A stretch of DNA of 64,000 nucleotides. It comes from Obrimoposthia wandeli (lineage: Eukaryota). Shown piece after piece: positions 1 to 29,843 of the stretch (within the stretch, counting starts at the first letter, position 1; every line of letters starts with the position of its first letter). Location of the stretch: assembly GCA_977020255.1 (NCBI GenBank), contig CDROCS010005599.1, forward strand, positions 1-64,000. Direction: 5' to 3'. The translations under genes and the position numbers were made by a program. Under the pieces are notes generated by a model. It did no database searches. It worked only from the letters and a program-made list of their open reading frames with translations, and was not told the origin of the DNA.

Positions 1-126
1 TTCAGACACTTCACTGATTTCTCCTATACTGGCACGATGTATTTGATTATTAATATCCCTTGCCGCTTCTTCTGGATTACCTGCCAGAATTATAGGCCGA
101 CCGACGATGATATGTGACGCACCACA
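1..126 (-). pseudogene. pyrF: C-terminal fragment of an orotidine-5'-phosphate decarboxylase-like gene, joined out of frame to the truncated aspA; open to the window edge
   Basis: Hand translation of 126->1: CGASHIIVGRPIILAGNPEEAARDINNQIHRASIGEISEVSE. This resembles the OMP decarboxylase C-terminal GxxxxVVGRPI...dP..aa..i motif. No 5' part of the gene is present. Confidence 0.6.
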
Positions 127-1168
127 CGCTATACCAAGCATCGAACTCTTGGCCGAGCGTCATGGGCACCGCGTCTTGTAGTTGGGTGCGCCCCATCTTG
201 ACCACATCTGAGAACTCAACCGCTTTTTGCTTGAATTGATAACACAGAGCAGACAATGCACTGACATACTCTTGATGGCTCAATAAAATAGCTAAGCGAA
301 TGGCAGTGGGGTAAGCGTCATTGGTAGATTGCGACAAGTTAACATGATTATTCGGATGTAAATGCTGATAGTCACCGCGCACATATCCCAGTATTTCTAG
401 GGCGCGGTTAGCGATCACTTCATTGGCGTTCATGTTGGTAGAAGTACCAGCGCCGCCTTGAATAACATCGACCACAAAATGTGAATGCCACTTCCCGGCA
501 ATGATTTCATCACAGGCTTGGCAAATAGCTGTCGCTTTGCTCTCATCGAGCATCCCCAGCTTGCGATTGGCTTTAGCCGCGGCTTTTTTCACCATCGCCA
601 GTGCACTGACCAGTTTTGGAAAATGCTGCAGTTGAATACCGGTGATGGCAAAATTTTCTGTGGCGCGAAGCGTTTGTACACCGTAGAGCGCATGATTTGG
701 GACGTCGCGTTCACCGAGTAAATCTGTCTCTGTGCGAGTGCTATTTTGTTGTAGTGCAGTGAGCTGCCATTGCTGACGTTGCATTTCCCATGCTAATAAA
801 AGTGCTGCCAGAGATGCGGTACGCTGCGAGCTGCTGAGCCACTGCTGTAGGGCACTGCGCTCAATCAGTAACAGAGTCGATTCTGTTATGGTTTGATAGT
901 GTATTGCAGCTGTTGTGCTTGAGCTGGCTGGCTCATTCAGCAGTGAATTAATGAGAGTGGGTGCATTGATTGGCAATGAATTGATCGCACAAGATGTAAC
1001 CTGTCCCTGCAATAAAATAGTGAGCTGCTGCGCTGCTAGCAGAGGCAATGAGGCGTTTTTGGCCAGCGCTGACAAGCGGCAAATCTTTAGCAACTCGCTA
1101 AACTCGCTCTCTTCTAAGTGCTCGCATTTAAGGGCTGTTTTGATTAACTTTTTATTATTGGCGTTCAT
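77..1168 (-). pseudogene. aspA: N-terminal degenerate cNMP-binding-like domain fused to aspartate ammonia-lyase; truncated after GQEFDAWYSV
   Basis: Aspartase motifs RTETDLLGERDVP, YGVQTLRATENF, QGGAGTSTNMNANEVIAN, HPNNHVNLSQSTND and KMGRTQLQDAVPMTLGQEF are present. The SSxMPxKxN signature and C-terminal half are absent. About 140 aa of N-terminal extension contains LTILLQGQV...LLLIERSALQQWL. Confidence 0.85.
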
Positions 1169-1291: not shown

Positions 1292-1342
1292 GCATATGTA
1301 AAATATTATAAATCTGTTAAAAGGATTTGTTTTTCTGATGCA
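1292..1342 (-). promoter_or_regulatory. Copy 1 of a shared 51-nt element with a LysR-type T-N11-A box, upstream of the aspA fusion
   Basis: Minus strand reads tgcatcagaaaaacaaatccttttaacagatttataatattttacatatgc; it aligns without gaps to copies at 2631 and 5392. Confidence 0.7.
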
Positions 1343-1504: not shown

Positions 1505-2479
1505 CTATTGGGGATTAGTGTCGGGGTCAGTTTGTTGCGCCAGGTTTTTATAAAAACGCTGATCGGTAAAGACTGATTGTGCCAGTTCGGCGGCGCGCGC
1601 TTTCAAGGTATTGATGAACGCATCGGCCACGGGAGTCGAGCGCAAACGTGAAATCTTTGCGACCCCTAAACGTAGTGGTCGCAACTCTTCACGCAGTGGT
1701 ATCGCGACAATCTCACTGCCATCCAACGCTAAGTTATTCACCAGTGGGGTATTAAACAGAGAGTAGCCAAAACCATTGGCCACTAGGCCGCGCACCATGC
1801 CTAAAGATTGTGCGCGATAGGCAAAATTCGGTTCCAAATCTTGGCTGAGAAAGAGCGAAAAGAAGTACTCGCGACTCATGGGCCAATCTAACAACACCAT
1901 AGGGTACTCGACGAGTTCTGCCAGTGATAACTCGGTACTTTCAGCCAGTGGGTGGTCCTTTGCCAATGCGACGTAAGGGGGGAATTCAATGATCGGCTCA
2001 AAGTCGATATCGTTGGGCAGCTGTAAATCATAAGTCAGTGCCAGCTCATAGCGTCCCTCTAGCAAACTCTCGATGATGTCTTTTTGGTGGCTTTCATCAC
2101 ACTGAATATTGACCTCAGGATAGGTTTCAATAAATTTTTTCATCAGCGAGGGCAATAATATTGGGGTAAACGTTGGAAAGCTGACGATCCGCAGCGTGCC
2201 GGCGATGTCTTTGCCTAACGTGCTGGCGTAGTGGCCTAAATTATCGGCATCGAGTAACAGTTGCTTTGATTTGAGAATAAATTGACGCCCAGCGGCCGTC
2301 AGTGAAAGCCCCTGTGCGTGATGACGGACAAATAACTGTAATCCAGTGGCATCTTCTAAATGCAATATAGCCGATGAGATAGAAGGCTGTGAGACATGTA
2401 GCTCTTCAGCAGCGCGAGTGACACTGCTGTGCTCACCGGCTTTGACGAAATAACGTAAGTGTTTCAGTGTGAAATGCAT
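1505..2479 (-). CDS. LysR family transcriptional regulator
   Basis: N-terminal HTH LKHLRYFVKAGEHSSVTRAAEELHVSQPSISSAI plus substrate-binding domain; divergent from the flavoprotein operon. Confidence 0.95.
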   Translation of the reverse strand: MHFTLKHLRYFVKAGEHSSVTRAAEELHVSQPSISSAILHLEDATGLQLFVRHHAQGLSLTAAGRQFILKSKQLLLDADNLGHYASTLGKDIAGTLRIVSFPTFTPILLPSLMKKFIETYPEVNIQCDESHQKDIIESLLEGRYELALTYDLQLPNDIDFEPIIEFPPYVALAKDHPLAESTELSLAELVEYPMVLLDWPMSREYFFSLFLSQDLEPNFAYRAQSLGMVRGLVANGFGYSLFNTPLVNNLALDGSEIVAIPLREELRPLRLGVAKISRLRSTPVADAFINTLKARAAELAQSVFTDQRFYKNLAQQTDPDTNPQ

Positions 2480-2630
2480 CTTGGCAGCCTCTTGTTTGTC
2501 GCAGAATTTATCGCACTGTCCTGCATCAATAATTAATTACTAAAAACCATACTAGATTAAAAATAATTATTCAAAGGTTTCCACCGGCGTTAATTTGTCG
2601 CGGATGGGCAGCGAGTTATCGTTTTATATC

Positions 2631-2681
2631 TGCATAGGTTTTTTTGATCTACTTGTTAAGTTAATAATATTTTAACAATGC
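2631..2681 (+). promoter_or_regulatory. Copy 2 of the shared 51-nt element, upstream of the flavoprotein operon
   Basis: tgcataggtttttttgatctacttgttaagttaataatattttaacaatgc. Confidence 0.75.
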
Positions 2682-2736
2682 AAAGAGTTTTTCTACTCTG
2701 GATCAATCGCTAAAGGAAATAAAACAGGACACAGAG

Positions 2737-3996
2737 ATGACAGTTGAAAACATAGACACTTTGGTTATCGGTGCCGGGCAAGCCGGTGTGGCAATGAGTG
2801 AGCATTTAAGTAAGTTAGAAGTGCCACACATCGTATTAGAACGTGACCGTATTGCCGAGCGCTGGCGCACCGGTCGTTGGGATTCACTAGTGGCAAATGG
2901 CCCGGCGTGGCACGATCGCTTTCCCGGTTTAGAGTTTGAAGGGGTCGATGATGATGCATTCGCCTCTAAAGAGCGGGTCGCCGACTACTTTGTCGAATAC
3001 GCCGCTAAGTTTAAAGCACCAGTGCGTACCGGTGTTGCGGTGACCAAAGTGACACGCAATGCCAATCAGTCAGGTTTTATTGTTGAAACCTCTGCTGGGG
3101 TGATTCACGCCAGCCGTGTTGTGGCGGCAACGGGGCCTTTCCAGCGCCCGGTTATTCCACCGATAGCCCCTAAAGATGGGCAGCTACACCAAATACACTC
3201 GGCGGATTATCGCAACCCAGAGCAGTTGCCAGAAGGAGGAGTGCTGGTGGTAGGCGCAGGCTCTTCAGGCGTGCAAATAGCCGATGAGTTGCGCGGTGCC
3301 GGCAGACAGGTTTATCTCTCCGTTGGCGCACATGATCGTCCACCACGGGCTTATCGCAATCGAGATTTTGTCTGGTGGTTAGGCGTACTGGGTGAATGGG
3401 ATGCGGCGGCGATGAAGCCCGGAGCTGAGCATGTCACTATCGCGGTGAGCGGTGCTAAAGGTGGTCAGACCATCGATTTTAGAAAATTGGCCCATCAGGG
3501 TATTACGCTCACCGGACTGACTGAGTCATTTGCGGATGGCAAGGTGACTTTTCAAGGAGATCTAGTCGGTAATATCGCCCGTGGTGATGCCAACTACAAC
3601 GCGCTGCTAGATGCGGCTGATGCCTATATTACTCGCAATGGTTTAGACCTGCCTGAAGAGCCGCAAGCACGCATTGTTCTAGCAGAACCTGATTGTATGA
3701 CCCATCCAATACGCGAGCTAGATCTAGCGCAAGCCGGTATTAATTCCATTATTTGGGCGACCGGTTTTGCGGTGGATTACAACTGGATGGAAGTAGACGC
3801 CTTCGATGACAAAGGCAAGCCACAGCACCAGCGAGGCGTATCGAGTGAGCCTGGAATTTATTTCATCGGGTTGCCGTGGCAGTCGCGCCGCGGCTCATCT
3901 TTCATCTGGGGAGTGTGGCACGACGCAAAGTATGTCGCCGATCACATTGAGACCCAGCGCAAGTATTTAGAATACCGCGACCCTTCACAGCGCTAA
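2737..3996 (+). CDS. FAD/NAD(P)-dependent oxidoreductase, flavin-containing monooxygenase (class B-like)
   Basis: Two Rossmann motifs (VIGAGQAG, VVGAGSSG), FMO-like QIHSADYRNP and WATGF; RBS GGA upstream. Confidence 0.9.
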   Translation: MTVENIDTLVIGAGQAGVAMSEHLSKLEVPHIVLERDRIAERWRTGRWDSLVANGPAWHDRFPGLEFEGVDDDAFASKERVADYFVEYAAKFKAPVRTGVAVTKVTRNANQSGFIVETSAGVIHASRVVAATGPFQRPVIPPIAPKDGQLHQIHSADYRNPEQLPEGGVLVVGAGSSGVQIADELRGAGRQVYLSVGAHDRPPRAYRNRDFVWWLGVLGEWDAAAMKPGAEHVTIAVSGAKGGQTIDFRKLAHQGITLTGLTESFADGKVTFQGDLVGNIARGDANYNALLDAADAYITRNGLDLPEEPQARIVLAEPDCMTHPIRELDLAQAGINSIIWATGFAVDYNWMEVDAFDDKGKPQHQRGVSSEPGIYFIGLPWQSRRGSSFIWGVWHDAKYVADHIETQRKYLEYRDPSQR

Positions 3997-4009
3997 TCGC
4001 GTTTATCGG

Positions 4010-4029
4010 TGTGGCTCTGTTGAGCCACA
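4010..4029 (+). other. Intergenic stem-loop
   Basis: tgtggctc-tgtt-gagccaca, a perfect 8-bp stem between the monooxygenase and Rid genes. Confidence 0.4.
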
Positions 4030-4075
4030 TCTTTGCTTTTCATAGCGTTTAGCACAGAGTTTTTCGGAGTGAAAA

Positions 4076-4492
4076 ATGGCAACACATACTAGAATTCGCA
4101 TGTTTAACACCAAAGAGACCTACCCTAATCAGAGTCTAGATAATGATCTCTGTCAGGCGGTTCGCGCTGGTAATACGGTGTATGTTCGCGGTCAAGTAGG
4201 CACTGATTTTGATGGTAATTTAGTAGGTTTAGGTGATCCAGGTGCACAAGCTGAGCAGGCGATGAAAAATGTTAAGCAGCTGTTGGAAGAGGCGGGCTCA
4301 GACCTCAGTCACGTGGTCAAGACAACAACGTATATAACTGATCCACGCTATCGCGAAGCGGTATACCGCGAGACCGGGAAATGGTTTAAGGGAGTATTTC
4401 CTATCTCTACCGGCCTAGTGGTGCAAGGTTTAGCACAGCCGCAGTGGTTAATGGAAATCGATATTATCGCGGTGATTCCCGACGGTAATTAG
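4076..4492 (+). CDS. Rid (YjgF/YER057c/UK114) family protein lacking the RidA active-site Arg
   Basis: AVRAGNTVYVRGQVG, QAEQAMKNVKQLLEEAG, PISTGLVVQGLAQPQWLMEIDIIA; PIST sits where RidA has PARS. Confidence 0.9.
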   Translation: MATHTRIRMFNTKETYPNQSLDNDLCQAVRAGNTVYVRGQVGTDFDGNLVGLGDPGAQAEQAMKNVKQLLEEAGSDLSHVVKTTTYITDPRYREAVYRETGKWFKGVFPISTGLVVQGLAQPQWLMEIDIIAVIPDGN

Positions 4493-4519
4493 CGTTAATA
4501 AAATGATCTAGGAGTTGCT

Positions 4520-5191
4520 ATGACTTTTTCAGTCGCTGGAGTTTGCCCAGAAACAGGCATGGTGGGTTGCATCATCACCTCATCAAGCATTTGTGTCACT
4601 AGCCGTTGCGCCTTTACGCGCAGCGGTACGGGTGTCGCCCTCACGCAAAATATAACGAATCCAGATTTGGGGCCTTTGGCGCTGGATTTGCTACAGCGCG
4701 GTGATGATGTGGCCGCGGTGATGCAGGCGCTGGGCAAGGCTGACGCTGACGTGCAGTGGCGCCAGCTCGGCGTACTGAGCTTAGACGGCCAAAGTCAGAC
4801 GTTTAGCGGGGAGCGAGCATTGGGAATACACGCCACCGCAAGCGGAAAAAACTGTATCGCCATGGGTAATTTATTGGCCAACACAGCAGTGCCACAGGTC
4901 ATGGTTGAAGCGTTTGAAGCCAGCACAGGACATTTGGCGCAGCGCTTACTGACCGCTCTAGAGGCTGGATTGGCAGCAGGTGGGGAGATGGGGCCCATTC
5001 ACTCGGCCGGATTGCGAGTGAACGCAGAACCGGCTTGGCCAGTGGTTGACTTACGGGTTGATTGGCACCAGAAGCCTATTGCCGAACTAGGGGCGCTGTG
5101 GCGTAACTATCAACCACAAATGCAGGCTTATATTACCCGCGCCACAGACCCTGCTAATGCCGAGTCTTACGGTGTGCCAGGCGACGAGTAG
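4520..5191 (+). CDS. DUF1028 family protein (Ntn-hydrolase superfamily)
   Basis: Starts MTFSVAG (Thr2), with SQNITNP-like TQNITNP, QWRQLGV, GNLLAN, AGGE...HSAGL and VDLRVDWH motifs. Confidence 0.9.
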   Translation: MTFSVAGVCPETGMVGCIITSSSICVTSRCAFTRSGTGVALTQNITNPDLGPLALDLLQRGDDVAAVMQALGKADADVQWRQLGVLSLDGQSQTFSGERALGIHATASGKNCIAMGNLLANTAVPQVMVEAFEASTGHLAQRLLTALEAGLAAGGEMGPIHSAGLRVNAEPAWPVVDLRVDWHQKPIAELGALWRNYQPQMQAYITRATDPANAESYGVPGDE

Positions 5192-5391
5192 CACTTATCT
5201 ATTAAGGCTCACGCAGTGTCTGGGATATGTTCGTGCCACCACAATCCTTGTGCGAGTGGTGGTTGACAGTCTTAGGGGGAACGACTGGATGCACTTGTAT
5301 TAGCTGTCGAGCGCTATTTTTTGCTGCATATCGATTCGCGCCAGCTTGAGGGTGCTGGCAATGCTGTTTGATGTAGCCAGCTGCTACTTCC

Positions 5392-5442
5392 TGTATTCGT
5401 TTTATTTATTCTAAACCTAAGAATTTAATATTTTACTAATGC
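5392..5442 (+). promoter_or_regulatory. Copy 3 of the shared 51-nt element, upstream of the ABC transporter operon
   Basis: tgtattcgttttatttattctaaacctaagaatttaatattttactaatgc. Confidence 0.7.
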
Positions 5443-5546
5443 TGAGTGAAACCCTAACGTCTTAATAGATTAAACAGTGATCAGCCGAGTTTGCAAAGTA
5501 AAGCTTACAGAGCTGCTATCACGTTAAACCATCGAGAATATACGCC

Positions 5547-6617
5547 ATGAAACACGCTATAAATATAAAAAATGTCAGCAAGTATTACGGCGACTATCGC
5601 GCGATTAAAGATATCTCTTTTGATATCAAAGACAACGAATTTTTTACCTTACTCGGCCCCAGTGGCTGCGGTAAAACAACCTTATTGCGAATGATTGCCG
5701 GTTTTGAAATGCCCAGCGGTGGTGTGATTAAACTACACGGTACGGATATCCAATCACTGCCCGCTCATCAGCGCCGTGTTAATACGGTGTTCCAAAATTA
5801 CGCACTCTTTCCTCATATGAACTTAGCGCAAAACATTGGTTTTGGTTTGCAAATGCTTAATTGGAATGAAGAGAAAATAGCAGCGCGAGTAGATGAAATG
5901 CTCGAGTTGGTCCACATGCGACCGTTTGCAGCGCGTATGCCTTCAGCATTGTCAGGAGGGCAACAGCAGCGCATAGCACTGGCCAGAGCACTGGCACCGC
6001 AACCAGAGGTTTTACTCTTAGATGAACCGCTATCGGCACTGGATTTAAAGCTGCGCCAATCAATGCGTGATGAGTTACAGCAATTACAGCGCGATACTGG
6101 GATTACCTTTATTTTTGTTACTCACGACCAGGAAGAGGCGCTGGCGATGTCGGACAGGATTTGTGTGCTAGCTGAGGGGGAAGTGCAACAACTGAGTAGC
6201 CCTAGTGAAATTTATGAAAATCCGAGTAATAAATTTGTCGCTGACTTTATTGGCGAAACCAACTTTATGCCAGTCACCATTCATTGTGACGATAGTGCAA
6301 CGGCTGCAATTACCAACCCTCTTGGGATTGACCTGAAGGTGCCCAATGAGGGTTATAGCCAAGGGCAAGAAGCGACCATGTCGCTGCGGCCAGAAAAAAT
6401 TTCTATCAACACTGCGGGGCTGGAGGTGAATTTACAAGGTGAGATTGTACAGCGTACCTACATGGGTGGTTATACCCACTATAAGGTTCGCATAGCGAAT
6501 GCCACTGAACTGCGTGTATCCAAGCGCAATACGATTAGTAACGATACCGAGTACAGCCTCAATCAACGGGTAGATATTGGCTTTAGCAAAGCGTCGGTGC
6601 GGGTGTTGTGCCAATGA
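5547..6617 (+). CDS. ABC transporter ATP-binding protein, PotA-like
   Basis: Walker A GPSGCGKT, signature LSGGQQQ, Walker B LLLDEP, C-terminal TOBE-like region. Confidence 0.95.
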   Translation: MKHAINIKNVSKYYGDYRAIKDISFDIKDNEFFTLLGPSGCGKTTLLRMIAGFEMPSGGVIKLHGTDIQSLPAHQRRVNTVFQNYALFPHMNLAQNIGFGLQMLNWNEEKIAARVDEMLELVHMRPFAARMPSALSGGQQQRIALARALAPQPEVLLLDEPLSALDLKLRQSMRDELQQLQRDTGITFIFVTHDQEEALAMSDRICVLAEGEVQQLSSPSEIYENPSNKFVADFIGETNFMPVTIHCDDSATAAITNPLGIDLKVPNEGYSQGQEATMSLRPEKISINTAGLEVNLQGEIVQRTYMGGYTHYKVRIANATELRVSKRNTISNDTEYSLNQRVDIGFSKASVRVLCQ

Positions 6618-7489
6618 AAAAGCTGAGTTGGAATTTTTGGGGTCTGTTACCGGCCTATGTAGTGATGTCACTGTTAATGGTGTTACCGCTGTTAATTATC
6701 TTTTACGTATCACTGATGAGCTCAGATCCCTACGGGGGTTTTAAGGCAGTTTTCTCACTGCAATCGTACAGTCAGATTCTCTATAGCGCAGACTGGGATG
6801 ACAACTTAGTCCTCAATTTACAGTACTTGAAAATCATTGCCAGAACCTTGCTGCTCTCCGGCGGCACCGCGGTGATTTGTCTACTGGTTAGCTTCCCGGT
6901 TGCCTACTATATTTCGCGTCAGAGCCACAACGTAAAAACCTTACTGCTCTACTTAGTCACGCTGCCATTTTGGGTCAGCATGGTGGTACGAGTGTACGCT
7001 TGGGTACTTATTTTAAGTAACGATGGGGTGTTGGAAAACGGGTTGCGCTTTTTTGGTTTGGTTGGCGACATCGACAGCTTACTCTACAACAATACCGCGA
7101 TGATGGTGGGTATGGTGTACACCTATATCCCACTGATGATCTTACCTATCTACGCCAGCATCGAAAAATTAGACACGCGTTTGATTGAGGCCGCTAGCGA
7201 TCTTTACAGTAGTCGGATGAATACGTTAAGAACCATCATTTTACCACTGTGTAAACCCGGGATCGTCGCGGGATTTGTCTTAGTGTTGGTGCCTTGTCTG
7301 GGTACGGTGCTTGAACCGATGTTGTTAGGTGGCGGCAAGACCATGATGTTAGGTAATTTGATTCAAAATCAATTTGGCGTGGCGCGCAACTGGTCTTTCG
7401 GTGCCAGTTTAACCGTATTACTACTGTGTATCGTGTTAGCGTTCTTGATGTTCCAAGCGCGCAGAACTAGCGCGTTGAAGGAGCTGTGA
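6614..7489 (+). CDS. ABC transporter permease, PotB-like
   Basis: LPFWVSMVVRVYAW and EAA motif LIEAASDLY. The ATG at 6614 overlaps the upstream stop (ATGA), so I prefer it to the GTG at 6608. Confidence 0.93.
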   Translation: MKKLSWNFWGLLPAYVVMSLLMVLPLLIIFYVSLMSSDPYGGFKAVFSLQSYSQILYSADWDDNLVLNLQYLKIIARTLLLSGGTAVICLLVSFPVAYYISRQSHNVKTLLLYLVTLPFWVSMVVRVYAWVLILSNDGVLENGLRFFGLVGDIDSLLYNNTAMMVGMVYTYIPLMILPIYASIEKLDTRLIEAASDLYSSRMNTLRTIILPLCKPGIVAGFVLVLVPCLGTVLEPMLLGGGKTMMLGNLIQNQFGVARNWSFGASLTVLLLCIVLAFLMFQARRTSALKEL

Positions 7490-8298
7490 TGAATATCTCA
7501 ACTATGTTTAAGCCCAATCGCGATGCAAAGCACTACCCAGGGTTTGGCGCGATAGGAATACTATTTTTTACTTTCCTCTATGTGCCGATACTAGTGATCA
7601 TCGCCTATTCATTTAACAGTAATCGTATTGTCTCGGTGTGGCAGGAGTTTTCTTGGCAGTGGTACGCCAGTGCGCTGCAAAACGAAGGCTTACTCAATGC
7701 ATTACGCGTCTCATTGACGGTGGCACTGTTTGCTACCTTGATAGCCACCGCGATAGCGATTGCTGCCGCACTAGTCTTGGCGAGAGGAAAAAACGTTAAA
7801 CACGCCAAACTGTCGACGGGAGTGATTAATTTACCGCTGATGTTGCCAGAGATTGTCTTTGCAGTGGCTATCTTGATTCTATTTTCGCAACTGGGAATTC
7901 AAAGTGGCTTGTTAAAACTAATTTTAGCGCACAGTGCTTTTTGTATTCCCTTCGCATTTTTACCTATTCGCGCTCGATTACAGGGAATGGATACCAACTT
8001 AGAACAGGCCGCGCAAGACTTGTACGCTACCCCTTTAGTGACTTTTCGCCGTATTACGCTGCCCTTAATCGCCCCCGGTATTTTTGCTGGCGCCATGCTC
8101 AGTTTTGTTATCTCGATGGATGATTTCATCACCAGCAATATTGTATCTGGTGGTGGTGCAACTACTTTACCGGTCTACATATTCTCTTTGGTAAAGCAGG
8201 GTGTCTCACCTGAGCTAAACGCAATATCGACCTTAATCATGGTGGCATCACTATTGATAGCCACACCTTGTTGGCTCATCGCCAAACGCAGCCGCTGA
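7489..8298 (+). CDS. ABC transporter permease, PotC-like
   Basis: YVPILVIIAYSFN, LEQAAQDLYA, SMDDF, TTLPVYIF; the ATG overlaps the upstream stop. Confidence 0.93.
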   Translation: MNISTMFKPNRDAKHYPGFGAIGILFFTFLYVPILVIIAYSFNSNRIVSVWQEFSWQWYASALQNEGLLNALRVSLTVALFATLIATAIAIAAALVLARGKNVKHAKLSTGVINLPLMLPEIVFAVAILILFSQLGIQSGLLKLILAHSAFCIPFAFLPIRARLQGMDTNLEQAAQDLYATPLVTFRRITLPLIAPGIFAGAMLSFVISMDDFITSNIVSGGGATTLPVYIFSLVKQGVSPELNAISTLIMVASLLIATPCWLIAKRSR

Positions 8299-8356
8299 GT
8301 AGACGCTTGGCTGCGAACCCGCATCACTAAATAGTCAAAATAAAAGGAATAAATCT

Positions 8357-9385
8357 ATGAAGTCTTTTACAAAAATCAGCTTATTGGCACTGAGTATATC
8401 TCTGACAACAGGGGCGAGCGCCGCGGGTAAACAGCTTAATGTTTACACTTGGGCGGAGTCAATTGACCCGGTGCTGATCGAGAATTTTCAAAAAGAAACC
8501 GGGATTGAGATTACTTTAGACAGCTATACCTCAAATGAGGATTTACTGGCAAAGCTGAAGTCGGGTAGTAGCGATTATGATGTGGTGTTCCCCAGCCAGC
8601 ACTTCGTTAAAATTATGATCCAAGAAAATTTGCTCAAAAATATTGATGCCAAGAATATGGCTGCATTTAAGCTGGTAGATGATAAGTGGAAAAACCAATG
8701 GTGGGATGCAACCTCAGAATATTCGATCCCCTTTGTTTATGGCACCGCAGGTTATGCTGTCAATCGCGATAAATATAAGGGGCCGGCAAATTCTTGGAAA
8801 GAATTCTTTGAGCCTACAGGAGCCGCTGTTGGGAACGTTGCAGTATTTAGTACCCCCGATGAGATTATCCCCGCGGCACAGCTTTACTTGGGCATAGACT
8901 TTTGCACTGAAAACAGTGCTGATATGAAAAAAGTTTTCCAGTTGTTAAAGAAACAAAAAGAAGATGTGGCCGTCTACAGCTCCGATAATATTAGCTCGCG
9001 TATTGCCAGCGGTGAAGTTGTGATGCACAACTGGTGGGATGGCGATACGATGCGTGCGCGCAAAAATAACAACGCACCTATCGAGTACGCGCAGCCTAAA
9101 GAAGGTTTAGTCGGTTGGTTAGATTCTATGGTGGTACCAAAGAACTCGCGCAACTCGGATAACGCTAAAACGTTTATTAACTGGATGAGTGAAAAAGACA
9201 ACGCGACAACAGAGTATAACTACTATGCTCACTCTTCTGCGGTGGCGATTGATGCAAGCAAAGCCGTCCACAAAGAAGAGAACTCACCTGAGATATTCCC
9301 CACAGCGCCGATTAAATTTACTCGCGCCTGCTCGCCAGCAGCACAAAAATTAGTTGATAAGGTATGGACGCAGTTACTACAGTAA
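8357..9385 (+). CDS. Periplasmic solute-binding protein, PotD/PotF family
   Basis: Signal peptide; LNVYTW, SNEDLLAKL..G...YDVVFPS, PKEG..GWLD motifs. Confidence 0.92.
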   Translation: MKSFTKISLLALSISLTTGASAAGKQLNVYTWAESIDPVLIENFQKETGIEITLDSYTSNEDLLAKLKSGSSDYDVVFPSQHFVKIMIQENLLKNIDAKNMAAFKLVDDKWKNQWWDATSEYSIPFVYGTAGYAVNRDKYKGPANSWKEFFEPTGAAVGNVAVFSTPDEIIPAAQLYLGIDFCTENSADMKKVFQLLKKQKEDVAVYSSDNISSRIASGEVVMHNWWDGDTMRARKNNNAPIEYAQPKEGLVGWLDSMVVPKNSRNSDNAKTFINWMSEKDNATTEYNYYAHSSAVAIDASKAVHKEENSPEIFPTAPIKFTRACSPAAQKLVDKVWTQLLQ

Positions 9386-9521: not shown

Positions 9522-10598
9522 TCAAATTGTCTTAGGCAACGATTCAATTTTCCCACCGGCGCTACTGCTCAAAAGTACCATTGCATCACCTATTTTCATG
9601 TTGGCTGCAGAGCCGTGAATGGCCTTTTCAGCGTCCTCTAGCGCTTGATCGAACTGGTTGGCAATACGTTGAAAGCTATCAACCTCCGCCGTTGTTTTAT
9701 CACTTATTTCAGACATTGAACTCAGTAAAGCCTCAATGCGTTGGTAGGCCTCGTTAGTGGTGCTCGCCATACCGCTTTCGCTCTGCGAACCGATAGAGGC
9801 CATTGATGATTCAATCGCTTTAGCCATCGTCGATATTTTTTCCCTCAGTGTCACTTCATTGCTCTGTAATTGTTGCAGGTTATGATTGATGCTTTTGGCA
9901 TCTTTGGTTGAATTCTGTGCCAATGTTTTTATTTCGTCGGCAACCACCGCAAAACCTCTACCCGCTTCACCCGCTCTCGCCGCTTCAATCGCCGCATTTA
10001 GCGCCAGTAAATTAGTTTGGTCTGAGGTGAAAGTGATGGCAGTGGCGAGTTGAGAAATACCGCTTAGATCACTGAGAAAATGATTGAGTTCGCGGTTTAA
10101 ATCTTCAGAAGTGCTAGAGAACTGATGGATTTCTCCACTGAGTGATTGCGTTTTATCACAGATCGTTGAAAACCCCAGTCGTAACTCATTGAGAGCGTGT
10201 TGATCTTTATTGAGTGCTTGCGCAATTATTTTTAGTTCATTAATTGATTGAGTTACCGCACAAGCGAGCTCAGTAAAGAAGAGTAAACGCTCTTTAGACG
10301 CCGCGTTTACTTTTGTGGCGTTTGTCAGTACCTGTTGTGCAAATTGTTGCAATTCACTGATGTCAGCTGATACTGGAGATGTGTCTAACACTGTGGGCTC
10401 GGTGGGCAAAGGCTCTGTTTTAAATATGATAAAAGGAATCAATAAACACAAGAAATACGTCAGTGCGATCAGAGACCAATTAAATGAAGCCCCCTGTGAA
10501 AAAGAGCCCTGCTGATAGCAGGCATTAATGACACTGGCCGCTATTATGCAAGATAAAAGGCTGCTGGCGGTGTAGGCATTACGTAAGCGTAAAAACAT
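9522..10598 (-). CDS. Methyl-accepting chemotaxis protein with minimal sensory region
   Basis: Signalling hairpin [31 protein letters not shown]; two N-terminal hydrophobic segments with a short loop; RBS AAGGA upstream of the ATG. Confidence 0.92.
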
Positions 10599-21972: not shown

Positions 21973-23631
21973 TTAAGCGCTCTGTTGTGTATTGGTAGTG
22001 ACAACGGGATCTTTGGCCGCGCGGCGCAAATCATTGATCAGTGCCTTGAGCAGCGAGATGGTCATCAGTGCCATGATGATAGAGAAAGGAACCGCGGCGA
22101 TAATCATCGCTGACTTAATGGCCCCTAACCCCCCTGCGATTAACAACACGGCGATAACCGCAGTGAACATCACACCCCAAATCACGATATGTGTTTTACT
22201 GCGATTGGGCAGTACACCAACCGAATTGATAGTGTTGACACATAAAATGGCCGAATCCGCAGAAGTCACCAAGAAAGTGGTGAGTAGGACTAATACGATT
22301 AAGGTCAGAATTGGGTAAATAGCGTCGGATACTAATAACTTAAGCATCATGAACAGTTGCGCTTCTTGGCCTGCGCCACTGATAGTGCCCGCAGCCTGTC
22401 CGCTTAGTTCTAGGTCAATAGCAGTACCACCTAGTACAGCGAACCAAATACAAGAGACGATGGTAGGTGCTAGCATTGCACCAACAATGAATTCACGAAT
22501 AGTACGTCCCTTTGAGATACGCGCTAAGAACAAGCCGACAAAAGGAGCAAAGGCAATCCACCACGCCCAGATAAACACAGTCCACCAACCTGATTGCCAA
22601 GAATTTAAGGCGTTAGCAGTGGGCTCGTCGCTGGCAGACCAATAAGTAAATAACTGGGTGGGTAGTTCAGCCAGATAAAGCAGCATACCCTCCAAGAACG
22701 CATTGAAAGCCAGTGCTGTGGCACCGAAAATTAGCACGAAGGCGATCAGAGCAACAGAGAGCACCATATTGATATTGGATAGCCACTTAATCCCTTTACC
22801 CACACCCGACATCGCTGAAATAATGGATAGTCCCATTACAATGACCAGCGCGAAAATCATGCCGATAGTCGAAGGTGATTTATCTGCGTTGAGTAGCCAT
22901 TCAAAGCCAAATACTTCGTAAATTCCCGAAGCGTACTGGCTGACGCCAAAGCCAACGGTGACAGCGACACCCAGTACCGTCGCAATAACCGCCGAAATAT
23001 CGACGATATGACCCAGGGGTCCCTCAAGCGCGCGACCGAATAAAGGTGTTAGCGCTGAGCGAATAGTCAGTGGTAGGCCGCGGTTGTAACTGAAAAAAGC
23101 CAGGCAAACACCGATCAATGCGTAGCAACCCCAAGCACTTAGGCCCCAGTGAAAGAAGGCCCACTTCATTGATGGCAGTACGTTACTCGCCGTGCCAGCA
23201 GTTGCCAAACCACGAATGGTATCCGGGTTATTGGCAAAGTGATAAAGAGGCTCTGCGGTGGCGTAAGTCATCATGCCAATGCCGATACCAGCACCGAACA
23301 TCATCGAGACCCAAGAGAAATAAGAGAACTCTGGTTTATCATCCACTTGACCCAGTTTGACACGTCCCAAACTCGGTACCAGCGCCAGTATGAAACACAC
23401 CAGTACAAATAGGCCCATGACATAAATGTACCAGGCACCTAAGTTGGTGAATGACCAGTTTTTGATAGCACTAAGCACATTGCCAGCACCTTCAGGATTC
23501 ATCGCCGCCCAAATGACCAGCAAGATAACCAGTATCTTGGCGCCCAGAGTAACGAATTGGTTAAAACCTTGGTAGAAACCGCTGGAGGAGGTTTCTACAT
23601 TGAGGTCAGTAATAGCTTTTTTTATTGTCAT
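21973..23631 (-). CDS. BCCT family transporter, probable trigonelline/betaine importer
   Basis: PEFSYFSWVSMMFGAGIGIG, HWGLSAW, WWTVFIWAWWIAFAPFVGLFLARISKGRTIREF, TSADS; last gene in the tgn direction. Confidence 0.93.
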   Translation of the reverse strand: MTIKKAITDLNVETSSSGFYQGFNQFVTLGAKILVILLVIWAAMNPEGAGNVLSAIKNWSFTNLGAWYIYVMGLFVLVCFILALVPSLGRVKLGQVDDKPEFSYFSWVSMMFGAGIGIGMMTYATAEPLYHFANNPDTIRGLATAGTASNVLPSMKWAFFHWGLSAWGCYALIGVCLAFFSYNRGLPLTIRSALTPLFGRALEGPLGHIVDISAVIATVLGVAVTVGFGVSQYASGIYEVFGFEWLLNADKSPSTIGMIFALVIVMGLSIISAMSGVGKGIKWLSNINMVLSVALIAFVLIFGATALAFNAFLEGMLLYLAELPTQLFTYWSASDEPTANALNSWQSGWWTVFIWAWWIAFAPFVGLFLARISKGRTIREFIVGAMLAPTIVSCIWFAVLGGTAIDLELSGQAAGTISGAGQEAQLFMMLKLLVSDAIYPILTLIVLVLLTTFLVTSADSAILCVNTINSVGVLPNRSKTHIVIWGVMFTAVIAVLLIAGGLGAIKSAMIIAAVPFSIIMALMTISLLKALINDLRRAAKDPVVTTNTQQSA

Positions 23632-23850
23632 AACACTTCCATGATTGAAAAAATCCCAATATTTATGCCGCTACTGCATCTCGATACGAGAGGTAAGCCA
23701 GCGCTAGCTAAATTTTGGACGAGCGAATACCTACTCAGAAAATTGAGCAAAAAGTATTCAGGTTAATGTGAGAGGGAATCCTCTCGGGGAGTCACCCGTC
23801 TATTCGAGCAGTCGTGGTCATGACGGCGGCTCGAACGGGTGATTTACTAC

Positions 23851-25341
23851 TTATCTGATCACAAAAGGATTACTCATAGGTTCAGATGAGGTATTAATCC
23901 ACGTGGTTTTAGTGCGGATGTAATCTTGGATGCCCTGTAATCCCGCTTCACGGCCGTAACCAGACTGGTTTATGCCGCCAAATGGGGCGATAGGAGAGGT
24001 GACACGATAGGTATTAACCCAGCAGATACCGGCGTTTATTTTGCTAGAAACGCGATGGGCACGAGCAATGTTTTGGGTGAAGACACCCGAGCCCAAACCG
24101 TAGATGCTGTCGTTAGCCATCTCAATAGCTTCGTCTTCAGTATCAAAAGTGACAATCGACATCACGGGGCCAAACATTTCTTGCTTGAGGGTTTCAATCT
24201 GGTGATTTGGGCATTCAACCATGGTCGGTTCAAAGTAGTTTTGCGAACCGAACTGGGGTGCGCGCTTACCGCCAAAACGAATAGTCGCGCCCTGCTCAAT
24301 GGATGTAGCCAACGTGCGCTCGATACATTCAACTTGGGCTACGGTACATAGTGGGCCGATGTGGGTCGCGCTATCTTGCGGGTCCCCGATAACAATATGC
24401 TTGGCTTTTTCTTCGATCAATGCAGTGATTTTAGCGACGACAGAGCGCTGGATGAAAGCGCGAGAACCAGCGACACAAGACTGACCAGAGGCACCAAAGT
24501 TACCCGCGATCAACGCATTGGCTGCACTTTCTAAATCGGCATCTTCAAACACGATCATCGGTGATTTACCACCGAGCTCTAGTGAGGTCACCGCGAAGTT
24601 TTCCGCAGTGTTACGGATCACGTGTTTAGCGGTTTCTGGACCACCGGTAAAGGCTAGGCGGTCAATATCAGGATGGGAAGTCAGTGGGATAGCACAGTTT
24701 TGTGCATCGCCGCTGATGATCGAGACGACCCCATCGGGGATTCCCGCTTGCTGAATCAATTTACCGAGTTCGAACATCGGTGCCGGTGCTTGCTCAGACG
24801 CTTTAAGGACGACCGTACAACCTGCTGCTAGGGCAGGGCCTAGCTTAGAGGCCGTGAGGAACATCTGTGCGTTCCAGGGAACAACAGCGGCAACTACGCC
24901 AATAGGCACAGGGGTGGTGAAGACGTGCATATCAGGTTTATCAATAGGCAGTACAGCGCCTTCAACTTTATCGGCAAGACCTGCATAGTAGCGATAATAG
25001 CTGGCAACATAGCGCGACTGACTCACTGTTTCTGCCGCGAGTTTACCGCTGTCAGTTGTTTCTATTTCACCGAGCGTTGCTGCGTTTGCTTCAACTAAAT
25101 CAGCCAATTTGTAGAGTAGTGCACCACGCTGGGTTGCATTCATTGCCGCCCACGGGCCTTTATTTAAATTGCGACGTGCCGCTTTGACTGCACGATCTAC
25201 GTCGTCTTTACTGGCGCAGGCAAAGGTAGCCCACTGTTCGCCGTTAGCTGGGTTTTCACTGCCCATAATTTGCTTTTCACTGCCCTCGACCCACTGGCCA
25301 TCGATCAGCAATTGAAAGTGAGGTAAGTTTTTATTTGTCAT
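23851..25341 (-). CDS. tgnC: Aldehyde dehydrogenase, TgnC-like (trigonelline pathway)
   Basis: FTGG, LELGGKSP, GQSCVAGSR, EMFGPV; context in the tgn cluster. Confidence 0.8.
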   Translation of the reverse strand: MTNKNLPHFQLLIDGQWVEGSEKQIMGSENPANGEQWATFACASKDDVDRAVKAARRNLNKGPWAAMNATQRGALLYKLADLVEANAATLGEIETTDSGKLAAETVSQSRYVASYYRYYAGLADKVEGAVLPIDKPDMHVFTTPVPIGVVAAVVPWNAQMFLTASKLGPALAAGCTVVLKASEQAPAPMFELGKLIQQAGIPDGVVSIISGDAQNCAIPLTSHPDIDRLAFTGGPETAKHVIRNTAENFAVTSLELGGKSPMIVFEDADLESAANALIAGNFGASGQSCVAGSRAFIQRSVVAKITALIEEKAKHIVIGDPQDSATHIGPLCTVAQVECIERTLATSIEQGATIRFGGKRAPQFGSQNYFEPTMVECPNHQIETLKQEMFGPVMSIVTFDTEDEAIEMANDSIYGLGSGVFTQNIARAHRVSSKINAGICWVNTYRVTSPIAPFGGINQSGYGREAGLQGIQDYIRTKTTWINTSSEPMSNPFVIR

Positions 25342-25417
25342 TGTCGTTACTCTCTAATTGTTAGTCTTACAGGGCGATATGAATCTCTGGGTACCTTGTA
25401 AAACACGGTATTCTTAA

Positions 25418-26452
25418 TCAGCTAAAGGCCGGCATTACTTCGTCGATAAAGCGCTTGAGCGACGTCTCTTTTTGCTCGCGATTCATTCCCGAATCACTCC
25501 AGTAAGAGAATTCGTCATAACCTAAATCCTGATAGTGCTTCAAGCGGTCAATAATCTGCTTGGATGTACCAATCATCAAGTCTTTGCGTATTTTATCGGC
25601 ACTGTAGAACGGGTGCGCAGCAACTTCTTCAGGGCTCAAGCGTTTAATTAAACCTTGATCGACTTCGCGCTCATTTTTAAACCAAGCGCCGAAATAGCAA
25701 TAGAATTCGTTTAACTGCTTGGCGGCAAGGGCCAATTCAGCTTCGTCTTTACCGACATAAGCGTGTTGTAAGATCATGATCTTAGGACGCTTTTTATGTG
25801 TTTCACAAGCTTGGTCAAATTTTTCGATTAAGCTCTCTACTTCTTCTAACCCTTGCCATAACGGTGTCACTTGGACATTACAGTCGTTTTCAACAGCAAA
25901 TTCATGGCTGTTAATATCGCGTGCAGCAACCCAAATAGGAGGACCTGTAGGGGTAGTGGGTTTTGGTGAAGAGCTAGTTTTAGGGAACTGGTAGTACTTA
26001 CTATCTTGCGTGTGGTTACCTGCCCATAGGCCTTTGATAGCGGGGATTATTTCACGTAAACGCTCACCTGCCTCCCACGCATCCATACCGCCTTGCATCA
26101 TTCGCTCGTATTCAAAAGAATATGCGCCGCGTGCAATACCCAGCTCTAGTCGTCCTTGAGTGATGATGTCAGTCATCGCCGCTTCACCGGCCAGTTTGAT
26201 GGGATTCCAAAAGGGAGCGACAATAGTGCCAGTGCCCAAGCGCGCATTTTTGGTGCGGTGCGCTAGATCAATCAAATTGAGGAAGGGGTTGGGGGCAATG
26301 GTAAAGTTCATACCGTGATGCTCACCGGTCCAAATGGTACACATGCCACCCTTATCCGCCATGTCGCAGAGCGATAAAAATTCTTGATAGAGATCAGTTT
26401 GGGTTTGCTCGTCGCTAACGCGTTCCATATGAGCAAATAGAGAAAATTTCAT
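25418..26452 (-). CDS. tgnB: Luciferase-like FMNH2-dependent monooxygenase TgnB (trigonelline ring cleavage)
   Basis: MKFSLFAHMERVSD...WTGEHHGMNFTIAPNPF...IARGAYSFEYERM...FGAWFKNERE closely matches my recollection of Acinetobacter baylyi TgnB. Confidence 0.88.
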   Translation of the reverse strand: MKFSLFAHMERVSDEQTQTDLYQEFLSLCDMADKGGMCTIWTGEHHGMNFTIAPNPFLNLIDLAHRTKNARLGTGTIVAPFWNPIKLAGEAAMTDIITQGRLELGIARGAYSFEYERMMQGGMDAWEAGERLREIIPAIKGLWAGNHTQDSKYYQFPKTSSSPKPTTPTGPPIWVAARDINSHEFAVENDCNVQVTPLWQGLEEVESLIEKFDQACETHKKRPKIMILQHAYVGKDEAELALAAKQLNEFYCYFGAWFKNEREVDQGLIKRLSPEEVAAHPFYSADKIRKDLMIGTSKQIIDRLKHYQDLGYDEFSYWSDSGMNREQKETSLKRFIDEVMPAFS

Positions 26453-26604: not shown

Positions 26605-26615
26605 GTCATCGCTCC

Positions 26616-27521: not shown

Positions 27522-27523
27522 GA

Positions 27524-29831: not shown

Positions 29832-29843
29832 CGGAACACAGTG

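What the first reader, a model, noticed from the sequence alone, without database searches (positions are those of the whole stretch)
2737..5191. Flavin monooxygenase, Arg-less Rid and Ntn-hydrolase (DUF1028): candidate N-heterocycle (possibly homarine) catabolic operon
Seen: a co-oriented FMO-type oxygenase, a Rid lacking the deaminase Arg (PIST for PARS) and DUF1028 with a potential N-terminal Thr nucleophile. Inference: oxygenation or ring opening followed by amide hydrolysis. From memory, the gene set resembles the reported homarine operon (homABCDER) of Ruegeria/Cobetia, but I am unsure of its exact gene content. No ArgE-like or Ldh-like partner is present here. The nearby trigonelline and DMSP clusters fit an algal-osmolyte substrate.
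Basis: partly seen in the sequence, partly recalled or inferred. Interest (0 to 1): 0.75.

Follow-up and report, generated by a model that had tools for sequence, protein, structure and literature searches.

The report
Histamine (imidazole-acetate) breakdown genes, not homarine
The three genes are a marine bacterium's copy of the known Pseudomonas hinF-hinL-hinH genes, which open the imidazole ring of imidazole-4-acetate (made from histamine) on the way to aspartate; it is an ordinary new member of a known pathway, not a homarine operon.

Summary
Window 2737-5191 holds a co-oriented FMO-type flavoprotein, a Rid protein without the deaminase arginine, and a DUF1028 protein with an Ntn-hydrolase fold and an invariant Thr2.

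The homarine reading fails. In R. pomeroyi, HomC (SPO3190) is a renal-dipeptidase-family protein and HomA and HomB were listed as hypothetical proteins. R. pomeroyi is absent from the best hits for this flavoprotein.

The trio is orthologous to Pseudomonas hinF, hinL and hinH. These are the first three genes of hinFLHG (PA5393-PA5390), which converts imidazole-4-acetate to aspartate. Identity to P. aeruginosa is 74%, 90% and 52%, in the same order.

- In other genomes the trio sits beside histamine dehydrogenase, a PuuC-like aldehyde dehydrogenase and an ArgE-like M20 hydrolase.
- The divergent LysR is a HinK homologue.
- The same 17-nt motif precedes hinF, the PotABCD-like importer and a truncated aspartase-like gene.

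The window lacks hinG, hinC or histamine dehydrogenase, and hinD, so the local module is partial.

This scan had already noted hin-type clusters on other DNA (s1-225563, s1-225568, s1-225599).

Verdict: new member of a known kind, low to moderate interest.

The parts
77..1168 (-). Remnant of a hinI-like aspartate ammonia-lyase gene with an N-terminal extension of about 150 aa. Homology runs only over 131-1168.
   Evidence: Lyase_1 and aspA models cover only the first half of the enzyme. The gene is 80% identical to residues 1-347 of the intact 617-aa protein of the Nitrincola MAG (L048:4217-6070). Homology stops at window 131. Window 1-129(-) reads, in another frame, like the C-terminus of an OMP-decarboxylase-type protein (family assignment from memory).
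1292..1308 (-). Copy 1 of the shared 17-nt operator-like motif, upstream of the hinI-like gene.
   Evidence: The pattern has 3 matches in 64 kb against 0.01 expected. It is also found upstream of the same gene in L048.
1505..2479 (-). Divergent LysR-type regulator, a HinK-family homologue.
   Evidence: HTH_1 plus LysR_substrate. Best PDB matches are 3FZV and 6M5F at 205 bits; the next is CysB at 95 bits. The LysR beside hinFLHG in a P. putida-group locus hits the same two entries at 544 bits.
2665..2681 (+). Copy 2 of the motif, 56 nt upstream of the hinF start codon.
   Evidence: Conserved upstream of hinF in L048 and L004.
2737..3996 (+). HinF orthologue: FAD/NAD(P)H flavoprotein monooxygenase, predicted imidazoleacetate 4-monooxygenase.
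   Evidence: Domains. 74% identical to the P. aeruginosa protein encoded between cls and cdhR. In the tree it falls inside the gamma/beta clade that holds P. aeruginosa HinF.
4076..4492 (+). HinL orthologue: Rid-family protein without the RidA arginine.
   Evidence: 90% identical to the P. aeruginosa protein. 84-96% identity across the best 120 protein hits, which include Halomonas, Vibrio, Colwellia and Klebsiella.
4520..5191 (+). HinH orthologue: DUF1028 protein with an Ntn-hydrolase fold and Thr2.
   Evidence: 52% identical to the P. aeruginosa protein.
5426..5442 (+). Copy 3 of the motif, upstream of potA.
5547..9385 (+). PotABCD-like ABC importer: ATPase 5547-6617, permeases 6608-7489 and 7486-8298, binding protein 8357-9385. 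Probable importer of the pathway's substrate, histamine favoured.
   Evidence: Domains. The binding protein resembles SpuD/SpuE, PotF and PotD structures. Homologues at 57-64% identity lie directly beside hinF in Mesorhizobium, Agrobacterium and Pseudaminobacter loci that also encode histamine dehydrogenase.

Best explanation
Window 1505-9385 is a partial hin-type regulon for catabolism of histamine and imidazole-4-acetate (ImAA).

**Shown by homology and synteny**
- The FMO, Rid and DUF1028 genes are orthologues of Pseudomonas hinF, hinL and hinH. These are the first three genes of the hinFLHG operon, which converts ImAA to aspartate.
- The divergent LysR is a HinK homologue.

**Inferred mechanism**
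1. HinF uses FAD, NAD(P)H and O2 to hydroxylate C5 of the imidazole ring (EC 1.14.13.5). The product tautomerises to 4-imidazolone-5-acetate.
2. HinH (Ntn hydrolase, Thr2 nucleophile) opens the lactam to give N-formiminoaspartate.
3. HinL hydrolyses the C=N of the formimino group to give N-formylaspartate and ammonia (EC 3.5.3.5). It is a Rid imine hydrolase. It lacks the arginine that holds a 2-imino-acid carboxylate, and the formimino carbon carries no carboxylate.

The two roles in steps 2 and 3 could be swapped.

**Steps not encoded here**
- Deformylation to aspartate (HinG, an M20 hydrolase).
- The first two steps from histamine (an aminotransferase or histamine dehydrogenase, then an aldehyde dehydrogenase).
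- The aspartase-like gene next to the regulator is truncated.

The PotABCD-like importer carries the same upstream motif as hinF. It probably brings in histamine. The regulator probably responds to ImAA, as HinK does in P. aeruginosa.
For: 1. **Histamine dehydrogenase in the cluster.** The roughly 690-aa flavoprotein inside many alphaproteobacterial FMO-Rid-DUF1028 clusters scores 1259 bits to PDB 6DE6 and 834 bits to 3K30, both histamine dehydrogenase. It is present in 23 of 61 loci that have at least 6 kb on both sides.
2. **Match to P. aeruginosa.** A contig carrying a protein that NCBI names as a P. aeruginosa flavin-containing monooxygenase has exactly four co-directional genes (FMO, Rid, DUF1028, M20). 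They lie between a PLDc gene and an AraC gene that is followed by OpuAC, BKACE and 3HCDH genes; dgcAB-like genes are upstream. This is the PA5394 to PA5385 neighbourhood, so the four genes are PA5393-PA5390. The review PMC8231116 lists these as hinF, hinL, hinH and hinG ('probable peptidic bond hydrolase'), induced up to about 2200-fold by histamine, and describes HinFLHG as the enzymes converting ImAA to aspartic acid.
3. **Identity.** Window proteins are 74%, 90% and 52% identical to the P. aeruginosa proteins, in the same order. The window flavoprotein branches inside the clade holding P. aeruginosa HinF.
4. **Conserved partners in 61 loci.** Rid plus DUF1028 in 55, M20 in 46, LysR in 47, PuuC-like aldehyde dehydrogenase in 26.
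5. **Regulator.** The LysR is a HinK homologue.
6. **Closest relative.** The Nitrincola MAG L048 has an intact aspartase-like gene and a PuuC-like aldehyde dehydrogenase next to the regulator. This fits HinI and HinD.
7. **Shared motif.** It occurs three times in 64 kb against 0.01 expected, upstream of hinF, potA and the aspartase-like gene. It is also upstream of hinF in L048 and L004.
8. **Other transporter.** In Pontibacterium, a TRAP system related to the ectoine binding proteins 3FXB and 2VPN sits between hinH and the M20 gene. This fits a carboxylate bearing a cyclic amidine, such as ImAA.
Against: - No hinG-type M20, histamine dehydrogenase, class-III aminotransferase or hin-type aldehyde dehydrogenase lies anywhere in the 64 kb.
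- The aspartase-like gene is cut after residue 347. The local pathway is therefore incomplete, and the rest of the genome could not be examined.
- In P. aeruginosa the histamine-induced PotF-like binding protein PA0222 binds GABA, not histamine (PMC8231116). The importer's substrate is therefore open.
- The step assignments of HinL and HinH are my inference. The primary paper (de la Torre et al. 2018) is not held.
- Mapping the P. aeruginosa genes to PA numbers rests partly on my memory of the flanking carnitine and dimethylglycine genes.
Confidence: 0.85

Rival explanations
1. The genes are homA, homB and homC of the homarine (N-methylpicolinate) catabolic operon.
For: - There is a superficial likeness. 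HomA has an FAD motif, HomC is called a peptidase, HomD is an aldehyde dehydrogenase and the regulator is adjacent.
- In alphaproteobacteria the order FMO-Rid-DUF1028-aldehyde dehydrogenase-LysR mimics homABCD-R.
Against: - R. pomeroyi SPO3190 (homC) is a 'renal dipeptidase family protein'. SPO3188 and SPO3189 are 'hypothetical proteins', not an FMO and a Rid.
- R. pomeroyi is absent from the best 80 genome loci and from the best 120 proteins for a Ruegeria FMO query.
- The locus has no BCCT transporter, M19 peptidase or aldehyde dehydrogenase.
- The histamine link explains all partners.
Confidence: 0.02
2. This is a hin-derived module re-used for a different imported substrate: another imidazole compound, or an amine taken up by the PotABCD-like system. 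In this lineage it has lost hinG, hinD and hinI from the locus.
For: - The window lacks hinG, hinC and hinD, and has a truncated hinI-like gene.
- The importer type differs from the transporters next to the Pseudomonas clusters (NCS1).
- HinH is only 52% identical to the P. aeruginosa protein.
- PA0222 binds GABA, not histamine.
Against: - HinF (74%) and HinL (90%) are highly conserved, and the window branches among ordinary hinF genes.
- The same importer type sits beside histamine dehydrogenase in alphaproteobacterial hin loci.
- In P. putida U the hin genes are spread over four loci, so missing genes may simply be elsewhere.
Confidence: 0.08
3. This is a decaying, non-functional remnant of a hin cluster.
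For: The adjacent aspartase-like gene is truncated at a junction with an unrelated gene fragment. Several pathway genes are missing from the window.
Against: - The three catabolic ORFs, the regulator and all four importer genes are intact.
- All invariant residues of their families are kept.
- The closest relative, L048, keeps the same intact arrangement.
Confidence: 0.05

Closest known systems
Pseudomonas hin pathway: hinFLHG (P. aeruginosa PA5393-PA5390) with hinK, hinDAC and hinI; described in P. putida U (de la Torre et al. 2018) and P. aeruginosa (Wang et al. 2021), as summarised in PMC8231116
   Same: - Same three families in the same order: FMO, Arg-less Rid, DUF1028.
- 74%, 90% and 52% identity.
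- A HinK-type LysR regulator.
- An aspartase-like gene in the regulon.
- A shared promoter motif, as reported for the hinD and hinF promoters.
   Different: - No hinG (M20) after hinH, and no hinC or hinD in the window.
- The regulator is divergent from hinF, whereas in PAO1 hinK lies next to hinDAC.
- A PotABCD-like ABC importer takes the place of the HinA permease.
- The aspartase-like gene is truncated.
Histidine utilisation (Hut) lower pathway: HutI imidazolonepropionase, HutF formiminoglutamate deiminase, HutG N-formylglutamate deformylase (established biochemistry, from my own knowledge)
   Same: Same chemical logic, one carbon shorter: imidazolone ring opening to an N-formimino amino acid, deimination to the N-formyl amino acid, then deformylation.
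   Different: The enzymes are not homologous. Hut uses amidohydrolase-superfamily enzymes and an FGase. The hin route uses a DUF1028 Ntn hydrolase, a Rid protein and an M20 hydrolase. It also needs a monooxygenase to make the imidazolone.
Homarine operon homABCDER (PMC13236597)
   Same: A small catabolic operon for an N-heterocyclic metabolite with an FAD-motif protein, a hydrolase, an aldehyde dehydrogenase and an adjacent regulator. Marine bacteria carry both.
   Different: HomC is an M19 renal-dipeptidase-family protein. HomA and HomB are not FMO or Rid by annotation. The transporter is of BCCT type and the products are N-methylglutamate and glutamate. No homology was shown.
MSMEG_0569 family flavin-dependent oxidoreductases (NCBIfam TIGR04046)
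   Same: Full-length similarity of the flavoprotein: 375 bits, about 36-42% identity to plasmid-borne members.
   Different: The score is below the family cutoff of 498, and the gene context is different. It is a sister family, not a member.

Membership tests
hin (histamine / imidazole-4-acetate) catabolic system | HinF-type flavoprotein monooxygenase orthologue | tested here: met
   74% identity to the P. aeruginosa protein, and placed inside the same clade.
hin (histamine / imidazole-4-acetate) catabolic system | HinL (Rid) and HinH (DUF1028) immediately downstream of hinF | tested here: met
   90% and 52% identity, same order. The trio is kept in 55 of 61 loci.
hin (histamine / imidazole-4-acetate) catabolic system | HinG, the M20 'peptidic bond hydrolase' (formylaspartate deformylase) | tested here: not met
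   tblastn finds no match in the 64 kb window. It may lie elsewhere in the genome.
hin (histamine / imidazole-4-acetate) catabolic system | Enzymes converting histamine to ImAA: HinC aminotransferase or histamine dehydrogenase, plus HinD aldehyde dehydrogenase | tested here: not met
   None in the window. The closest relative, L048, has a PuuC-like aldehyde dehydrogenase two genes upstream, a region the window has lost or does not cover.
hin (histamine / imidazole-4-acetate) catabolic system | HinK-type LysR regulator | tested here: met
   Best PDB hits are 3FZV and 6M5F at 205 bits. The same entries score 544 bits with the LysR beside hinFLHG in a P. putida-group locus. That these entries are PA0218 (HinK) is from memory.
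hin (histamine / imidazole-4-acetate) catabolic system | Induction by, and growth on, histamine or ImAA | not testable with these tools
No culture data.
homABCDER homarine operon | HomC, an M19 renal-dipeptidase-family hydrolase, next to a HomD aldehyde dehydrogenase | tested here: not met
   Annotations of SPO3190 and SPO3191. The window has DUF1028 instead and no adjacent aldehyde dehydrogenase.
homABCDER homarine operon | HomA/HomB pair orthologous to SPO3188/SPO3189 | tested here: inconclusive
   Both were annotated 'hypothetical protein'. R. pomeroyi is absent from the best hits. Their sequences could not be fetched for a direct comparison.
RidA imine/enamine deaminases (canonical) | Active-site arginine (E. 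coli R105, human R107) that binds the 2-imino-acid carboxylate | tested here: not met
   A serine takes its place, invariant in 72 of 72 orthologues. It belongs to the Rid superfamily but is not a canonical RidA.
Ntn hydrolases | Proteasome-beta-like fold with the nucleophile at the mature N-terminus | tested here: met
   The model matches 2IMH and then 20S beta and Anbu subunits. The first strand starts at residue 2, and Thr2 is invariant. Catalysis itself was not tested.
Class B flavoprotein monooxygenases | Two Rossmann GxGxxG motifs (FAD and NAD(P)H) in one chain | tested here: met
   GAGQAG at residue 12 and GAGSSG at residue 173 are kept across 86 homologues, fully or nearly so. N-terminal half resembles the 4USR, 4USQ and 4A9W monooxygenases.
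MSMEG_0569 family (TIGR04046) | Score at or above the curated cutoff | tested here: not met
   375.5 bits against a cutoff of 498.35.

The most novel reading that the evidence does not exclude
In this pathway, DUF1028 (HinH) is the ring-opening imidazolone-acetate amidohydrolase. The Arg-less Rid (HinL) is the N-formiminoaspartate deiminase (EC 3.5.3.5). That would give a first defined chemistry to Pfam DUF1028 and to an arginine-less Rid subfamily. In this Oceanospirillaceae lineage the module has also been re-wired to a PotABCD-type histamine importer under one HinK-like operator.
Probability: 0.35. Interest if true: 0.45.

Novelty: new member of a known kind. Interest (0 to 1): 0.25.

Why it matters
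- The result corrects an attractive but wrong label. The cluster handles the imidazole ring of histamine-derived imidazole-4-acetate, not homarine.
- The hin lower pathway (FMO, Rid, DUF1028) is very widely and tightly conserved. HinL stays at 84-96% identity across the best 120 protein hits, and genome loci span Alpha-, Beta- and Gammaproteobacteria and one actinomycete.
- It is linked with at least three transporter types and two alternative first enzymes.
- Histamine is plentiful around decaying animal tissue and fish. A marine Oceanospirillales relative of an Osedax bone-worm symbiont carrying an importer-coupled hin module therefore makes ecological sense.
- The practical value is modest. 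DUF1028 and this Rid subfamily still carry no functional name in the Pfam and NCBIfam libraries searched here. This locus and its many relatives give a clear, testable assignment for them.

Tried and rejected
**Readings rejected**
1. Homarine hom operon. Rejected on gene content and on the absence of R. pomeroyi among the best hits.
2. MSMEG_0569 family membership. Rejected because the score is below cutoff and the context differs.
3. A trigonelline-linked function. This was suggested by a tgn-like cluster directly beside the trio on a Leisingera plasmid and 17 kb away in the window. I dropped it because the tgn set is absent from nearly all other loci.
4. Demethylation of a betaine. This was suggested while I took the 690-aa OYE-plus-FAD protein for a StcD/DgcA-like demethylase. 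I dropped it when the protein proved to be histamine dehydrogenase.
5. An ectoine route. This was suggested by the TeaA/UehA-like TRAP binding protein in Pontibacterium. I now read it as an importer for a similar cyclic-amidine carboxylate (ImAA).
6. Puu-like polyamine or Rut-like pyrimidine routes, considered from the Pot-like and NCS1 transporters. These are superseded.

**Dead ends**
- The supplements of the homarine paper are not held.
- Two other R. pomeroyi papers had no SPO3188-SPO3192 rows.
- Text searches for DUF1028 or old annotation phrases found nothing useful.
- The primary hin paper is not held.
- None of the three word-index protein searches listed R. pomeroyi or P. aeruginosa directly. 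P. aeruginosa was reached through cluster members.
Full report
**Observation**

- The first is a Pyr_redox_3/FMO-type flavoprotein. It resembles the MSMEG_0569 family over its full length but scores 375 bits against a cutoff of 498. Two GxGxxG motifs and an HS..Y motif are kept across 86 homologues, fully or nearly so.
- The second is a Rid (L-PSP) protein. Aligned with human UK114 and T. thermophilus TTHA0137, P-I-S-T lies opposite P-A-R-A, so the RidA arginine is replaced by serine. P-[IVC]-S-T-G is kept in 72 of 72 orthologues, so this is a family trait.
- The third is DUF1028 (1.1e-59), homologous to PDB 2IMH. Thr2 and Ser4 are invariant. An AlphaFold model (pLDDT 89.6) matches 2IMH at TM 0.84 and then proteasome beta and Anbu subunits. 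Its first strand begins at residue 2. The Ntn-hydrolase reading is therefore supported.
- A LysR gene lies divergently at 1505-2479. A PotABCD-like importer follows at 5547-9385.

**The homarine hypothesis**

The homarine paper (PMC13236597) defines homABCDER in Cobetia sp. OBi1 and R. pomeroyi SPO3188-SPO3192. HomA carries an FAD motif, HomC is a predicted peptidase and HomD is an aldehyde dehydrogenase. The text gives no protein families, and its supplements are not held.

Older R. pomeroyi tables settle the point:
- SPO3188 and SPO3189 are 'hypothetical protein'.
- SPO3190 is 'renal dipeptidase family protein'.
- SPO3191 is 'aldehyde dehydrogenase family protein'.

A DUF1028 protein is not a renal dipeptidase.

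R. pomeroyi is missing from two lists although several other Ruegeria species are present: the best 80 genome loci found with a Roseobacter query, and the best 120 proteins for a Ruegeria arenilitoris query.

I could not fetch the hom sequences for a direct alignment. Non-homology of HomA and HomB is therefore inferred, not shown.

**What the neighbours say**

I fetched 80 genome loci and several assemblies, then mapped partners by tblastn. Among the 61 genome loci with at least 6 kb on both sides of the flavoprotein:

| Partner | Loci (of 61) |
|---|---|
| Rid plus DUF1028 | 55 |
| ArgE-like M20 hydrolase | 46 |
| LysR | 47 |
| PuuC-like aldehyde dehydrogenase | 26 |
| ~690-aa OYE-plus-FAD protein | 23 |
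| PotABC-like genes | 13 |
| NCS1 permease | 8 |

- Pseudomonas and Burkholderiaceae show FMO-Rid-DUF1028-M20, then LysR and NCS1.
- Alphaproteobacteria show FMO-Rid-DUF1028-aldehyde dehydrogenase-LysR, with M20, the 690-aa protein and Pot-like genes nearby.
- I first took the 690-aa protein for a StcD/DgcA-like demethylase. Against the PDB it scores 1259 bits to 6DE6 and 834 bits to 3K30, both histamine dehydrogenase. That result turned the reading to histamine.

**Link to the published hin genes**

The review PMC8231116 summarises de la Torre et al. 2018 and Wang et al. 2021:
- In P. putida U and P. aeruginosa, histamine goes to imidazole-4-acetate through HinC and HinD.
- HinFLHG convert imidazole-4-acetate to aspartate.
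- Aspartate then goes to fumarate.
- The LysR regulator HinK senses imidazole-4-acetate and binds a motif shared by the hinD and hinF promoters.
- In PAO1, hinF, hinL, hinH and hinG are PA5393-PA5390, and PA5390 is a 'probable peptidic bond hydrolase'.

Through cluster members of the Rid protein I reached a protein that NCBI names as a P. aeruginosa flavin-containing monooxygenase. Its contigs carry PLDc, FMO, Rid, DUF1028, M20, AraC, OpuAC, BKACE and 3HCDH genes, with dgcAB-like and M19 genes upstream.

From my own knowledge of the PAO1 map this is cls (PA5394), four genes, then cdhR-caiX-cdhCAB (PA5389-PA5385). The four genes are therefore hinFLHG.

The window proteins are 74%, 90% and 52% identical to them, in the same order. 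In a quick tree of 87 flavoproteins, the window pairs with a Nitrincola MAG (support 100). It lies inside the gamma/beta clade that contains the P. aeruginosa protein. Only a Klebsiella plasmid paralogue that lacks Rid and DUF1028 sits on a long separate branch.

**Regulator and regulon**

- The window LysR has 3FZV and 6M5F as its best solved relatives, at 205 bits; the next is CysB at 95 bits.
- The LysR beside hinFLHG in a P. putida-group locus hits the same two entries at 544 bits.
- I believe these entries are PA0218 (HinK), but that is from memory.
- The 17-nt motif TAATATTTTAMNWATGC occurs three times in the 64 kb (0.01 expected) and nowhere else. The copies lie upstream of hinF, potA and the aspartase-like gene.
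- The pattern was derived from these same three copies, so the count is partly circular. However, its core recurs upstream of hinF and of the aspartase-like gene in the Nitrincola MAG, and upstream of hinF in Pontibacterium.

**What is missing here**

- The window has no M20 hinG, histamine dehydrogenase, class-III aminotransferase or hin-type aldehyde dehydrogenase.
- The aspartase-like gene (77-1168, minus strand) matches only residues 1-347 of the intact 617-aa protein of the Nitrincola MAG. Homology ends at position 131.
- In the MAG a PuuC-like aldehyde dehydrogenase follows that gene.
- Window 1-129 reads, in another frame, like the C-terminus of an OMP-decarboxylase-type protein (family assignment from memory).
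- Either a deletion removed the rest, or the assembly is chimeric at that point.
- hin genes are scattered over four loci in P. putida U. The missing steps may therefore be encoded elsewhere, which I could not check.

**Mechanism**

Homology shows the three genes are hinF, hinL and hinH. The rest is inferred from established biochemistry: the classical imidazoleacetate pathway (EC 1.14.13.5, 3.5.3.5, 3.5.1.8) and its close parallel, the Hut pathway.

1. HinF hydroxylates the imidazole ring, and the product tautomerises to imidazolone-acetate.
2. A hydrolase opens the lactam to N-formiminoaspartate.
3. A deiminase gives N-formylaspartate and ammonia.
4. HinG releases aspartate and formate.

I favour HinH (Ntn amidohydrolase) for the ring opening and HinL for the deimination. 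Rid proteins hydrolyse C=N bonds. The lost arginine normally binds a carboxylate on the imine carbon, and a formimino carbon has none. The opposite assignment is not excluded.

**Transporters**

- Pot-like systems 57-64% identical to the window's lie beside hinF in Mesorhizobium, Agrobacterium and Pseudaminobacter loci that also carry histamine dehydrogenase. This favours histamine as cargo.
- Against this, the review reports that the histamine-induced PA0222 binding protein binds GABA, not histamine.
- In Pontibacterium, a TRAP system related to the ectoine binders 3FXB and 2VPN, plus a Usp gene, is inserted between hinH and the M20 gene. This fits uptake of imidazole-4-acetate itself.

**Earlier notes of this scan**

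After I reached the histamine reading, I found that the scan had already described hin-type clusters on other pieces:
- s1-225563, a hin-type cluster.
- s1-225568, a shared LysR operator.
- s1-225599, a PotABCD-like importer.

These agree with my reading but are not independent evidence.

Notes on hom operons elsewhere (s1-214806, s1-241127) made me doubt the hom reading. I then tested it through.

**Verdict**

The genes are a new, locally incomplete member of the known hin system in a marine Oceanospirillaceae bacterium related to Osedax symbiont Rs1 and Nitrincola. They are coupled to a Pot-type importer. Interest is low to moderate.

Noticed in passing
window 21973-31853: Trigonelline-type (tgn-like) cluster: BCCT transporter, aldehyde dehydrogenase, luciferase-like monooxygenase, flavin reductase, alpha/beta hydrolase, AA_synth (DUF1185), then a divergent GntR, a CMD-family protein and a second aldehyde dehydrogenase. 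The same core set (no BCCT, CMD or second aldehyde dehydrogenase seen there) lies directly upstream of the hin trio on a Leisingera aquaemixtae plasmid (L005).
   Followed up: partly
window 1-131: Homology of the aspartase-like gene to its intact Nitrincola counterpart stops at 131. Window 1-129 (minus strand, other frame) reads like the C-terminus of an OMP-decarboxylase-type protein. This is either a deletion junction or an assembly join.
   Followed up: partly
window 58752-62665: LysR, aldehyde dehydrogenase and iron-containing alcohol dehydrogenase in a row. Only domains were checked.
   Followed up: no
window 9522-10598 (-): Short methyl-accepting chemotaxis protein (358 aa, signalling domain only) directly after the importer's binding-protein gene. 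P. aeruginosa shows chemotaxis to histamine through TlpQ. No link was tested here.
   Followed up: no
L013:9290-10432, L014:9254-10441, L073:9097-10428; L009:9308-10840: In some Roseobacter-group loci a GbcA-like Rieske oxygenase gene is inserted between hinF and hinL. In one locus (L009) it is an HpaB-like hydroxylase gene instead. Its role in a histamine cluster is unexplained; N-methylhistamine or another substituted imidazole is a guess.
   Followed up: no
L004:12832-16320: In Pontibacterium granulatum a TeaABC/UehABC-like TRAP transporter plus a Usp gene sits between hinH and the M20 gene. The binding protein scores 233 bits to the ectoine binder 3FXB. It is a candidate imidazole-4-acetate importer.
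   Followed up: partly
L006 (Klebsiella pneumoniae plasmid NZ_CP020903.1): Klebsiella plasmids carry a paralogous flavoprotein (63% identity) with no Rid or DUF1028. It lies next to Pot-like ABC genes, an alpha-hydroxy acid oxidase and an ArgE gene, and sits on a long branch in the tree. Function unknown. Klebsiella accounts for 474 of the 718 matching plasmid records, but most of those listed are MSMEG_0569-family proteins at about 42% identity.
   Followed up: no
L048:545-2493: In the Nitrincola MAG an AAA_21 (AbiEii-like) ATPase and an RloB-like protein, a possible defence pair, flank the hin cluster.
   Followed up: no
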